Of a stretch of DNA of 64,000 nt, positions 60,043 through 60,147 are shown one piece after another. The stretch's first letter is position 1, and every line of letters begins with the position of its first letter. The DNA is from Octopus sinensis. Its lineage: Eukaryota. The stretch is from contig NC_042998.1 in the NCBI RefSeq assembly GCF_006345805.1, positions 11,594,001 through 11,658,000 on the forward strand, given 5' to 3'. Under the pieces are notes generated by a model. That model searched no databases. It was not told where the DNA came from and saw only the letters and a list, made by a program, of their open reading frames with translations. The position numbers were made by a program, and so were the translations under genes.

Positions 60043-60147
60043 AGGTTCCTTGTCTTTCCTGATGAGAAGGCGGCATAATGTACCCTTTATTCCTTCGGAA
60101 TTAAGAATATGCAGTCTTCGAAACATATGTCGAGAATAAAGGAATTT
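60043..60147 (+). ncRNA. Type-I hammerhead ribozyme motif, GUC cleavage site after 60131, sense to the alpha-catenin pre-mRNA
   Basis: Stem I UUUC/GAGA plus 3x3 loop plus AGGUUCCUU/AAGGAAUUU; CUGAUGA 60059..60065; stem II GAAGGC-G-GCAUA/UAUGC-A-GUCUUC; GAAAC 60120..60124; palindromic stem III ACAUAUGU; GUC 60129..60131. Confidence 0.88.

What the first reader, a model, noticed from the sequence alone, without database searches (positions are those of the whole stretch)
60043..60147. Intact GUC hammerhead in the sense strand of the alpha-catenin pre-mRNA, upstream of the microexon
Seen: full core (CUGAUGA, GAAA, GUC), 11-bp proximal stem II in a 54-nt arm, and a stem I of 4 bp plus 3x3 internal loop plus 9 bp. 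Predicted cleavage is after 60131, 574 nt before the 21-nt microexon, in a 266-bp element bounded by (TA)n. Established: intronic self-cleaving ribozymes exist in vertebrate genes (CPEB3 HDV-like; amniote HH9/HH10 hammerheads), and a 2-bp palindromic stem III (ACAUAUGU) normally needs a second copy to fold. Inference: either silent as a monomer, explaining tolerance in an essential gene, or a conditional cutter activated in trans by related RNAs that could alter microexon inclusion or yield transcripts lacking the C-terminal tail.
Basis: partly seen in the sequence, partly recalled or inferred. Interest (0 to 1): 0.85.

Follow-up and report, generated by a model that had tools for sequence, protein, structure and literature searches.

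The report
Transposon-type hammerhead ribozyme in catenin intron
A complete hammerhead self-cleaving RNA motif does lie in the sense strand of an alpha-catenin intron, but it is built like the hammerheads that animal retroelements carry in thousands of copies, so it is most likely a stranded mobile-element copy and not a regulator of the gene.

Summary
At 60043-60147 (+) there is a type I hammerhead with a perfect core (CUGAUGA, GAAA, A15.1-U16.1, G10.1-C11.1, GUC). It has a 54-nt helix II arm, a helix I of 4 bp, a 3x3 loop and 9 bp, and a 2-bp helix III inside the palindrome ACAUAUGU. It lies in the sense strand of a 3078-nt alpha-catenin intron, 574 nt before a 21-nt exon. A motif this good did not occur in 5.74 Gb of random sequence of the same composition, so it is not chance. 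No Rfam hammerhead model detects it.

A type I topology, a minimal palindromic helix III, low GC and a discrete 266-bp insert splitting a (TA)n microsatellite are the published signature of hammerheads carried by Penelope-like elements and non-LTR retrozymes. These are dispersed as solo monomers, often in introns. As a monomer, helix III is predicted unstable (+0.6 kcal/mol), no partner copy exists in the window, and the usual loop-loop contacts are not recognisable. I expect little or no cleavage.

No cephalopod sequence was reachable, so copy number and conservation are untested. Verdict: an ordinary new member of a known kind, and a splicing role is unsupported.

The parts
59898..59919 (.). 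Left (TA)11 microsatellite flank of the insert
59920..60185 (+). 266-bp insert carrying the hammerhead. GC is 38%. The termini are 8/10 inverted-complementary (AGTAGGTGAA / TTCATTTACT). As RNA it folds with its ends paired (MFE -68.8 kcal/mol, z = -2.0).
60043..60058 (+). Helix I 5' strand: distal 60043-51, internal loop 60052-54, proximal 60055-58
   Evidence: duplex -9.5 kcal/mol; P=0.026 given the proximal 4 bp
60059..60065 (+). Core C3-U4-G5-A6-U7-G8-A9 (CUGAUGA)
60066..60119 (+). Helix II arm, 54 nt: G10.1-C11.1 pair, 11 pairs in 12 proximal positions, 7x2 internal loop, then a distal 3+5 bp hairpin with a UUC loop
60120..60123 (+). Core G12-A13-A14 plus A15.1 (GAAA)
60123..60130 (+). Helix III, the palindrome ACAUAUGU. 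As a monomer it forms 2 bp plus an AUAU loop (+0.6 kcal/mol). As an intermolecular duplex it forms 8 bp (-7.0 kcal/mol).
60129..60131 (+). Cleavage triplet GUC. The predicted scission is 3' of C60131.
   Evidence: sequence; cleavage itself is inferred
60132..60147 (+). Helix I 3' strand: proximal 60132-35, loop 60136-38, distal 60139-47
60161..60170 (+). GTTCGACTCC, a Pol III B-box-like decamer and the only GTTCGANNCC in the window. Its significance is uncertain.
   Evidence: ARAGORN found no tRNA
60186..60268 (.). Right (TA)n microsatellite flank (42 units)
57535..57627 (+). Alpha-catenin exon (LDSATSLIQAAKNLMNSVVLTVKACYVASTK) upstream of the host intron 57628-60705
60706..60726 (+). 21-nt exon (YKSSSVY) with AG/GT splice sites, 574 nt downstream of the predicted cleavage site
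63298..63456 (+). Last coding exon of alpha-catenin, ending in a stop codon

Best explanation
The motif is a genuine type I hammerhead ribozyme sequence that entered the intron as part of a 266-bp mobile-element insert in a (TA)n microsatellite. It is most likely a solo monomer of a non-LTR retrozyme or a 5'-truncated terminal fragment (pLTR) of a Penelope-like element.

In that family the ribozyme processes multimeric element transcripts. Two adjacent copies pair their palindromic helix III strands into one long helix, each core cleaves after GUC, and the unit-length RNA is circularised and reverse-transcribed.

This copy is alone in the alpha-catenin pre-mRNA. Its helix III is only 2 bp and its helix I/II loops are not the canonical docking pair, so it is expected to cleave very slowly or not at all. 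It would then be spliced out with the intron as a neutral passenger.

Shown: the motif, its statistics, the insert anatomy, the gene context and the fold energies. Inferred: the mobile-element origin, the family mechanism (from the literature) and the inactivity.
For: - Complete core and three helices at the stated coordinates.
- 0 equally good motifs in 5.74 Gb of random sequence.
- Helix III as a monomer costs +0.6 kcal/mol, against -7.0 for the palindrome duplex.
- The insert is discrete, 266 bp, 38% GC, and splits a (TA)n tract.
- Published metazoan type I hammerheads have a helix III of 1-2 bp capped by a 2-4 nt palindromic loop. They occur in PLE terminal repeats and are mostly found as single dispersed motifs with low in vitro activity (PMC4209133).
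- Non-LTR retrozyme units are 150-450 bp with low GC, and are reported in a mollusc, the mussel Mytilus (PMC7229834).
- PLEs show an insertion bias for microsatellites, (TA)n for Naiads (PMC8557442).
- In Xenopus about 43% of retrozyme copies are intronic and monomers are evenly dispersed (bioRxiv 10.64898/2026.07.22.740005).
- A cephalopod genome (giant squid) has 235 Rfam Hammerhead_1 loci and Penelope elements (PMC6962438).
- The surrounding intron is repeat-rich: an interspersed repeat copy lies at 59232-59700.
Against: - No second copy of the element or of the ribozyme was found in the window, in metagenome or viral contigs, or among predicted proteins. Those collections appear to lack cephalopod genomes, so family membership is untested rather than refuted.
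- There is no PLE reverse transcriptase or GIY-YIG ORF nearby. The only RT in the window is LINE-like and 10 kb away.
- The helix II arm (54 nt, about 20 bp) is far longer than in described PLE or retrozyme hammerheads.
- Naiads, the PLE clade with the documented (TA)n preference, lack canonical hammerheads (PMC8557442).
- The imperfect terminal inverted repeats and TA flanks would also fit a MITE.
- No Rfam hammerhead model matches.
Confidence: 0.68

Rival explanations
1. One reading: a domesticated or conditional intronic ribozyme. It would be silent alone but activated in trans by related RNAs pairing through the helix III palindrome, and would modulate inclusion of the 21-nt exon or truncate transcripts before the C-terminal tail.
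For: - The motif is in the sense strand, has an intact core and lies 574 nt upstream of a microexon.
- The palindromic helix III could pair with any RNA carrying the same palindrome in a hammerhead context (-7.0 kcal/mol).
- Amniote intronic hammerheads derived from retroelements are a precedent (PMC6155905).
Against: - No conservation evidence could be obtained.
- There is no partner copy in the 64-kb window.
- The 7 microexon residues align without gaps to a gastropod alpha-catenin, so the exon looks constitutive.
- Slow hammerhead cleavage in an intron leaves splicing intact (the exon-tethering work summarised in PMC2995048).
- A 5' fragment cleaved there would lack a poly(A) signal, so a stable tail-less product is not expected (inference).
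- Domesticated examples are defined by deep conservation and stable monomeric folds, neither of which is shown here.
Confidence: 0.05
2. The hammerhead is real and mobile-element-borne, but the carrier is a different class. It could be a TA-targeting MITE-like DNA element with short terminal inverted repeats, or a Pol III-driven SINE-like retroposon of the Schistosoma Sm-alpha/Sj-alpha kind.
For: - The termini are 8/10 inverted-complementary exactly at the TA boundaries (P about 6e-4).
- The flanks are TA, the Tc1/mariner target (my own knowledge).
- The only GTTCGANNCC B-box-like motif of the window lies inside the insert at 60161-70.
- SINE-like elements bearing hammerheads are documented in schistosomes (PMC2770079).
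Against: - ARAGORN finds no tRNA-like structure, and no A box is recognisable by eye.
- The inverted termini are only about 10 nt and imperfect.
- Pairing of the ends is also expected for rod-like retrozyme RNAs (PMC7229834).
- I know of no MITE family described with a hammerhead (my own knowledge, not searched).
- Both clues were noticed post hoc.
Confidence: 0.17
3. A chance hammerhead look-alike: an AT-rich hairpin-forming sequence that happens to be bracketed by CUGAUGA, GAAA and GUC and never descended from a ribozyme.
For: - Minimal-descriptor hits do arise by chance, at 0.034 per window and about 1500 per genome-equivalent.
- Given the proximal pairs, the extra helix II stability is unremarkable (P=0.10).
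- Rfam models do not score it.
- Real genomes are richer in hairpins than random sequence, and the first stage may have screened many windows.
Against: - There were 0 motifs with helices I and II as stable as observed in 5.74 Gb of random sequence, about one genome on both strands.
- The motif also has the fully palindromic 8-nt helix III and the G10.1-C11.1 pair, which are hallmarks not demanded by the descriptor.
- It sits in a discrete insert of retrozyme size.
Confidence: 0.07

Closest known systems
Type I hammerheads of metazoan non-LTR retrozymes (coral, mussel, axolotl; Cervera & de la Pena 2020, PMC7229834)
   Same: - Type I topology, with helix I open and helices II and III closed.
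- Canonical core with GUC.
- A 2-bp helix III capped by a palindromic tetraloop, described as typical of invertebrate hammerheads.
- Unit size within 150-450 bp and low GC.
- Mollusc examples (the mussel Mytilus) also lack the archetypal loop1-loop2 nucleotides.
- The element RNA is predicted to be highly self-paired.
   Different: - It is a single copy and not a tandem array.
- Helix II is about 20 bp in a 54-nt arm, against about 4 bp.
- The helix I internal loop comes after 4 bp rather than 6.
- No circRNA or expression data are available.
- No sequence relative was retrievable.
Minimal and atypical hammerheads in the terminal repeats (pLTRs) of Penelope-like elements (Cervera & de la Pena 2014, PMC4209133; Craig et al. 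2021, PMC8557442)
   Same: - They are mostly found as solo dispersed motifs, attributed to truncated PLEs.
- Helix II is longer than usual and helix I is short (4-5 bp).
- Positions 15.2-16.2 and loop 3 are palindromic, and G10.1-C11.1 is conserved.
- Activity is low and dimer-dependent.
- PLEs insert preferentially into microsatellites, including (TA)n.
   Different: - There is no RT/GIY-YIG ORF or second pLTR in the window.
- The unpaired nucleotide between A9 and 10.1 that is typical of PLE min-hammerheads is absent here.
- The PLE clade documented to target (TA)n (Naiad) lacks canonical hammerheads.
Conserved intronic hammerheads of amniotes (HH9 in RECK, HH10 in CTCL/C10orf118, DTNB; Rfam RF02275/RF02277; de la Pena & Garcia-Robles 2010, reviewed in PMC6155905)
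   Same: It is a type I hammerhead in the sense strand of an intron of a protein-coding gene, thought to derive from retroelement hammerheads.
   Different: - The amniote motifs are defined by conservation across amniotes and by similarity to canonical type I hammerheads. Stable monomeric activity is my recollection, not something I checked.
- Here conservation is untested and helix III is minimal.
- Rfam HH9/HH10 models do not match.
Sm-alpha / Sj-alpha SINE-like retroposons of schistosomes bearing a hammerhead (Ferbeyre 1998; Laha 2000; cited in PMC2770079)
   Same: It is a short (about 300 bp) dispersed non-autonomous element with an embedded type I hammerhead. A B-box-like GTTCGACTCC is present at 60161-70.
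   Different: Sm-alpha is recognisably tRNA-derived and tRNAscan calls it tRNA-Gln. Here ARAGORN finds nothing, and the B-box-like motif lies 3' of the ribozyme with no A box.
Newt satellite 2 and ASBVd double-hammerheads (Forster et al. 1988, cited in PMC6155905)
   Same: The weak palindromic helix III implies activity through a two-copy extended helix III.
   Different: Those RNAs are made as tandem multimers, so the partner lies in cis. This copy has no partner within 64 kb.

Membership tests
Hammerhead ribozyme (type I) | Conserved core: C3 U4 G5 A6 N7 G8 A9, G12 A13 A14, A15.1-U16.1, H17 | tested here: met
   CUGAUGA at 60059-65, GAAA at 60120-23, U60130, C60131
Hammerhead ribozyme (type I) | Three helices around the core, with helix I open and helices II and III hairpin-closed, and a G10.1-C11.1 pair | tested here: met
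   Helix I has 4+9 bp and helix II has 11 of 12 proximal pairs with G66-C119. Helix III has only 2 bp plus a tetraloop and is marginal, at +0.6 kcal/mol.
Hammerhead ribozyme (type I) | Score above the curated threshold of an Rfam hammerhead covariance model (RF00163, RF02275, RF02277, etc.) | tested here: not met
   No hit at gathering score and none at E<=10 in a 401-nt search. The likely causes are the roughly 40-nt insertion in helix II and non-canonical loops (inference).
Hammerhead ribozyme (type I) | Loop1-loop2 tertiary contact supporting activity at physiological Mg2+ | tested here: inconclusive
   The 3x3 loop in helix I after 4 bp and the G.A mismatch at helix II position 7 are the only candidate docking sites. 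The canonical loop nucleotides are not recognisable.
Hammerhead ribozyme (type I) | Site-specific self-cleavage giving 2',3'-cyclic phosphate and 5'-OH ends | not testable with these tools
   Needs a transcription/cleavage assay or RNA-end sequencing.
Non-LTR retrozyme | Head-to-tail tandem repeats of 150-450 bp, each with a type I hammerhead | tested here: not met
   There is one copy only. blastn of the insert against the window gives no second copy, and there is no second CGAAACATATGTCG-like site. A solo monomer derivative remains possible.
Non-LTR retrozyme | Unit size, low GC and a highly self-paired RNA | tested here: met
   266 bp and 38% GC. MFE is -68.8 kcal/mol with the ends paired, z = -2.0.
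Non-LTR retrozyme | Multicopy family in the genome, expressed as circRNA | not testable with these tools
   No cephalopod genome or transcriptome was reachable. Searches of metagenome, viral and protein collections were empty or gave chance hits only.
Penelope-like element terminal repeat (pLTR) | Hammerhead within a repeat flanking an RT plus GIY-YIG ORF | tested here: not met
   No such ORF is nearby. The only RT (49829-50647) matches RVT_1, looks LINE-like to me by its motifs, and is 10 kb away. A 5'-truncated solo fragment is not excluded.
Penelope-like element terminal repeat (pLTR) | Insertion into a microsatellite target | tested here: met
   The insert splits a (TA)n tract: 59898-59919 and 60186-60268. 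The bias is described in PMC8557442.
Domesticated intronic hammerhead (HH9/HH10-like) | Orthologous conservation of sequence and structure across distant species | not testable with these tools
   Alpha-catenin homologues retrieved reach at most 80% identity and none is cephalopod. Exact look-ups of window ORFs failed.
tRNA-derived SINE with hammerhead (Sm-alpha-like) | tRNA-like head with A and B boxes | tested here: not met
   ARAGORN finds 0 tRNAs. Only a B-box-like decamer is present at 60161-70.

The most novel reading that the evidence does not exclude
The insert could represent an undescribed cephalopod hammerhead lineage with a greatly extended helix II. This copy might have been co-opted: the intronic ribozyme would be switched on by pairing its helix III palindrome with abundant retrozyme RNAs of the same family, coupling mobile-element expression to processing of the last alpha-catenin exons.
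Probability: 0.04. Interest if true: 0.7.

Novelty: new member of a known kind. Interest (0 to 1): 0.25.

Why it matters
If the ordinary reading is right, this is one more dispersed retroelement hammerhead. Its use is as an annotation point: Rfam models miss it, so hammerheads with long helix II arms are probably under-counted in cephalopod genomes. It would matter more if the copy proved conserved or catalytically active in the pre-mRNA. That would be an invertebrate parallel to the amniote intronic hammerheads, and a test case for trans-activated ribozyme control of splicing in an essential adhesion gene.

Tried and rejected
- **Rfam**, whole window at gathering score and local E<=10 searches at both motifs: no hammerhead family.
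- **Second copy in the window**: blastn of the insert, a core/helix III pattern with up to 3 mismatches, and a terminal-repeat pattern. Nothing beyond chance.
- **Relatives elsewhere by DNA pattern**: viral contigs gave 0. Metagenome contigs gave 3 hits that are one unrelated sequence lacking helices I and II, so chance.
- **Relatives through ORF translations of the insert**: 0 hits in the 5.8-billion protein set and 0 in the 1.84-billion representative set.
- **Orthologous loci through alpha-catenin**: homologues were found but none is cephalopod. Ten window ORFs are not in the collection, so the look-up of encoding contigs could not be used.
- **tRNA/SINE head**: ARAGORN was negative.
- **PLE ORF in the window**: none. 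The only RT matches RVT_1 and looks LINE-like.
- **Chance origin**: rejected by the 5.74-Gb null.
- **Stable truncated alpha-catenin product from cleavage**: rejected by inference, because there is no poly(A) signal argument for it and slow intronic cleavage is tolerated (PMC2995048).

Full report
**Observation**

- The core is CUGAUGA at 60059-65.
- The helix II arm is 54 nt (60066-60119). It opens with the conserved G10.1-C11.1 pair and has 11 pairs in its first 12 positions, with one G-U and one G.A mismatch.
- GAAA lies at 60120-23.
- Helix III is the fully palindromic octamer ACAUAUGU at 60123-30. As a monomer this is only A-U and C-G closing an AUAU loop.
- The cleavage triplet is GUC, ending at C60131.
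- Helix I has 4 bp, then a 3x3 internal loop, then 9 bp (60043-58 against 60132-47).

The motif sits in a 266-bp, 38% GC segment (59920-60185). This segment interrupts a TA microsatellite: (TA)11 at 59898-59919 and about 42 units at 60186-60268.

**Gene context**

The exon at 57535-57627, the 21-nt exon at 60706-60726 and the terminal coding exon at 63298-63456 all read on the + strand. They match the Pfam Vinculin/alpha-catenin family.

They align at 76% identity and without gaps to a gastropod alpha-catenin. That alignment includes the seven residues of the microexon, which therefore looks like a normal and probably constitutive part of the protein.

The hammerhead is in the sense strand of the 3078-nt intron 57628-60705, 574 nt upstream of the microexon.

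**Is it chance?**

A simple descriptor was used: core, helix I of at least 4 bp, helix II of at least 4 bp, helix III of at least 2 bp. It finds this motif and one weaker one in the window.

In 5.74 Gb of random sequence at the window's base composition, roughly one cephalopod-sized genome on both strands, the counts were as follows:

| Criterion | Hits |
|---|---|
| Minimal descriptor | 1531 |
| Helix II of at least 6 bp | 235 |
| Also a short helix III | 24 |
| Helix I duplex and helix II arm as stable as observed | 0 |

Given the proximal pairs, the distal part of helix I is unusual (P=0.026). The extra helix II stability is not (P=0.10).

The perfectly palindromic helix III and the G10.1-C11.1 pair were not demanded by the descriptor. 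I conclude the motif descends from a real hammerhead.

Two caveats apply.
- No Rfam hammerhead model scores it, even at E<=10 in a 401-nt search. I attribute this to the long insertion in helix II and the non-canonical loops.
- Thermodynamic folding puts the hammerhead-consistent structure (-22.0 kcal/mol) 3.4 kcal/mol above an MFE that shifts helix I by two nucleotides and pairs core A6-U7-G8 with the helix III strand.

**What it is**

The architecture matches published descriptions.
- Most metazoan hammerheads are type I, with a helix III of 1-2 bp capped by a 2-4 nt palindromic loop. This helix is too weak for efficient monomeric cleavage but can form an extended helix III between two copies (PMC4209133; PMC3088659; PMC6155905).
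- Such motifs reside in the terminal repeats of Penelope-like elements. They are mostly found dispersed as single motifs attributed to truncated PLEs, and they show low in vitro activity (PMC4209133).
- The related non-LTR retrozymes are 150-450-bp, low-GC, highly self-paired units. In a mussel their hammerheads lack the archetypal loop-loop nucleotides and cleave slowly (PMC7229834).
- PLEs have an insertion bias for microsatellites, (TA)n in the Naiad clade (PMC8557442).
- In Xenopus about 43% of retrozyme copies lie in introns and monomers are evenly dispersed (bioRxiv 10.64898/2026.07.22.740005).
- A cephalopod genome, the giant squid, has 235 Rfam Hammerhead_1 loci and Penelope elements (PMC6962438).

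The insert here has the right size and composition, splits a (TA)n tract, folds with paired ends (MFE -68.8 kcal/mol, z = -2.0), and lies in a repeat-rich intron. The best reading is a solo retrozyme or PLE-derived copy.

**What could not be shown**

I could not retrieve any relative.
- There is no second copy in the window.
- Viral contigs gave nothing.
- The metagenome scan returned three copies of one unrelated sequence that lacks helices I and II.
- Translations of the insert found nothing in either protein collection.
- The collections appear to lack cephalopod data. The best alpha-catenin hits are at most 80% identical and non-cephalopod, and ten window ORFs are not on record.

Copy number, PLE linkage and orthologous conservation are therefore untested.

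Three features fit the PLE/retrozyme picture imperfectly.
- The helix II arm is about 20 bp.
- There is no PLE ORF in the window.
- The termini are 8/10 inverted-complementary exactly at the TA boundaries (P about 6e-4).

Together with a B-box-like GTTCGACTCC at 60161-70, the only one in the window, these leave room for a MITE-like or Sm-alpha-like SINE carrier (PMC2770079). ARAGORN, however, sees no tRNA-like head.

**How it most likely behaves**

As a monomer, helix III is predicted to cost +0.6 kcal/mol, whereas the palindrome duplex gives -7.0 kcal/mol. No partner lies in cis, and recognisable tertiary docking loops are missing. Slow or no cleavage is therefore expected.

This is an inference. 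Invertebrate retrozyme hammerheads, described in the same paper as having a 2-bp helix III capped by a tetraloop, did self-cleave in co-transcriptional assays of cloned genomic copies (about 0.8 per min for coral and about 0.1 per min for mussel, PMC7229834).

Even if slow cleavage occurred, published work shows that introns cut by a hammerhead are still spliced, and only very fast ribozymes abort processing (summarised in PMC2995048). An intronic copy in an essential gene is thus tolerable without any special explanation.

The proposed trans-activation and control of microexon inclusion have no support in the data, though they are not excluded.

**Verdict**

This is a new member of a known kind, a dispersed retroelement-type type I hammerhead with an unusually long helix II. 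Interest is low to moderate. The decisive tests are genome-wide copy search, comparison of the orthologous intron, and monomer-versus-dimer cleavage assays.

Noticed in passing
window 38458-38500, minus strand: A second, compact hammerhead-like motif lies antisense to the gene: CCAC CUGACGA AUGUC-AUUGAA-GACAU GAAA CGAUUGUA GUGG. Its core is intact, but it has A10.1-U11.1 instead of G-C and helix I is only 4 bp. It sits next to a 79-bp tandem repeat at 38516-38761. Chance expectation for motifs of this quality is about 0.03 per window, and there is no Rfam hit at E<=10.
   Followed up: partly
window 60161-60170 (+): GTTCGACTCC matches the Pol III B-box core GTTCGANNCC. It is the only match in the 64-kb window and lies inside the 266-bp insert, 29 nt after the cleavage site. 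No A box or tRNA-like fold was found.
   Followed up: partly
window 59920-59929 and 60176-60185: The insert termini are imperfect inverted repeats (AGTAGGTGAA / TTCATTTACT, 8 of 10, P about 6e-4) directly abutting TA repeats. This is MITE-like, or it reflects rod-like RNA pairing.
   Followed up: partly
window 59232-59700, with copies at 5630-5776, 11066-11228, 14834-14994, 23460-23639, 41396-41544, 45048-45509 and 54806-55602: An interspersed GC-richer repeat family of up to about 470 bp with internal sub-repeats, present in at least 8 copies in both orientations. One copy lies 200 bp upstream of the hammerhead insert. It has no Pfam match.
   Followed up: partly
window 49829-50647 (+): A 272-aa ORF matches reverse transcriptase RVT_1 (E=1.5e-25), with motifs that look LINE-like to me. 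It is a retrotransposon fragment in another alpha-catenin intron, not a Penelope-like element.
   Followed up: partly
window 67-991: A long low-complexity CT/GA-rich tract that produces spurious ORFs of 260-290 aa in several frames.
   Followed up: no
window 7031-7130: A run of 100 N, which is an assembly gap.
   Followed up: no
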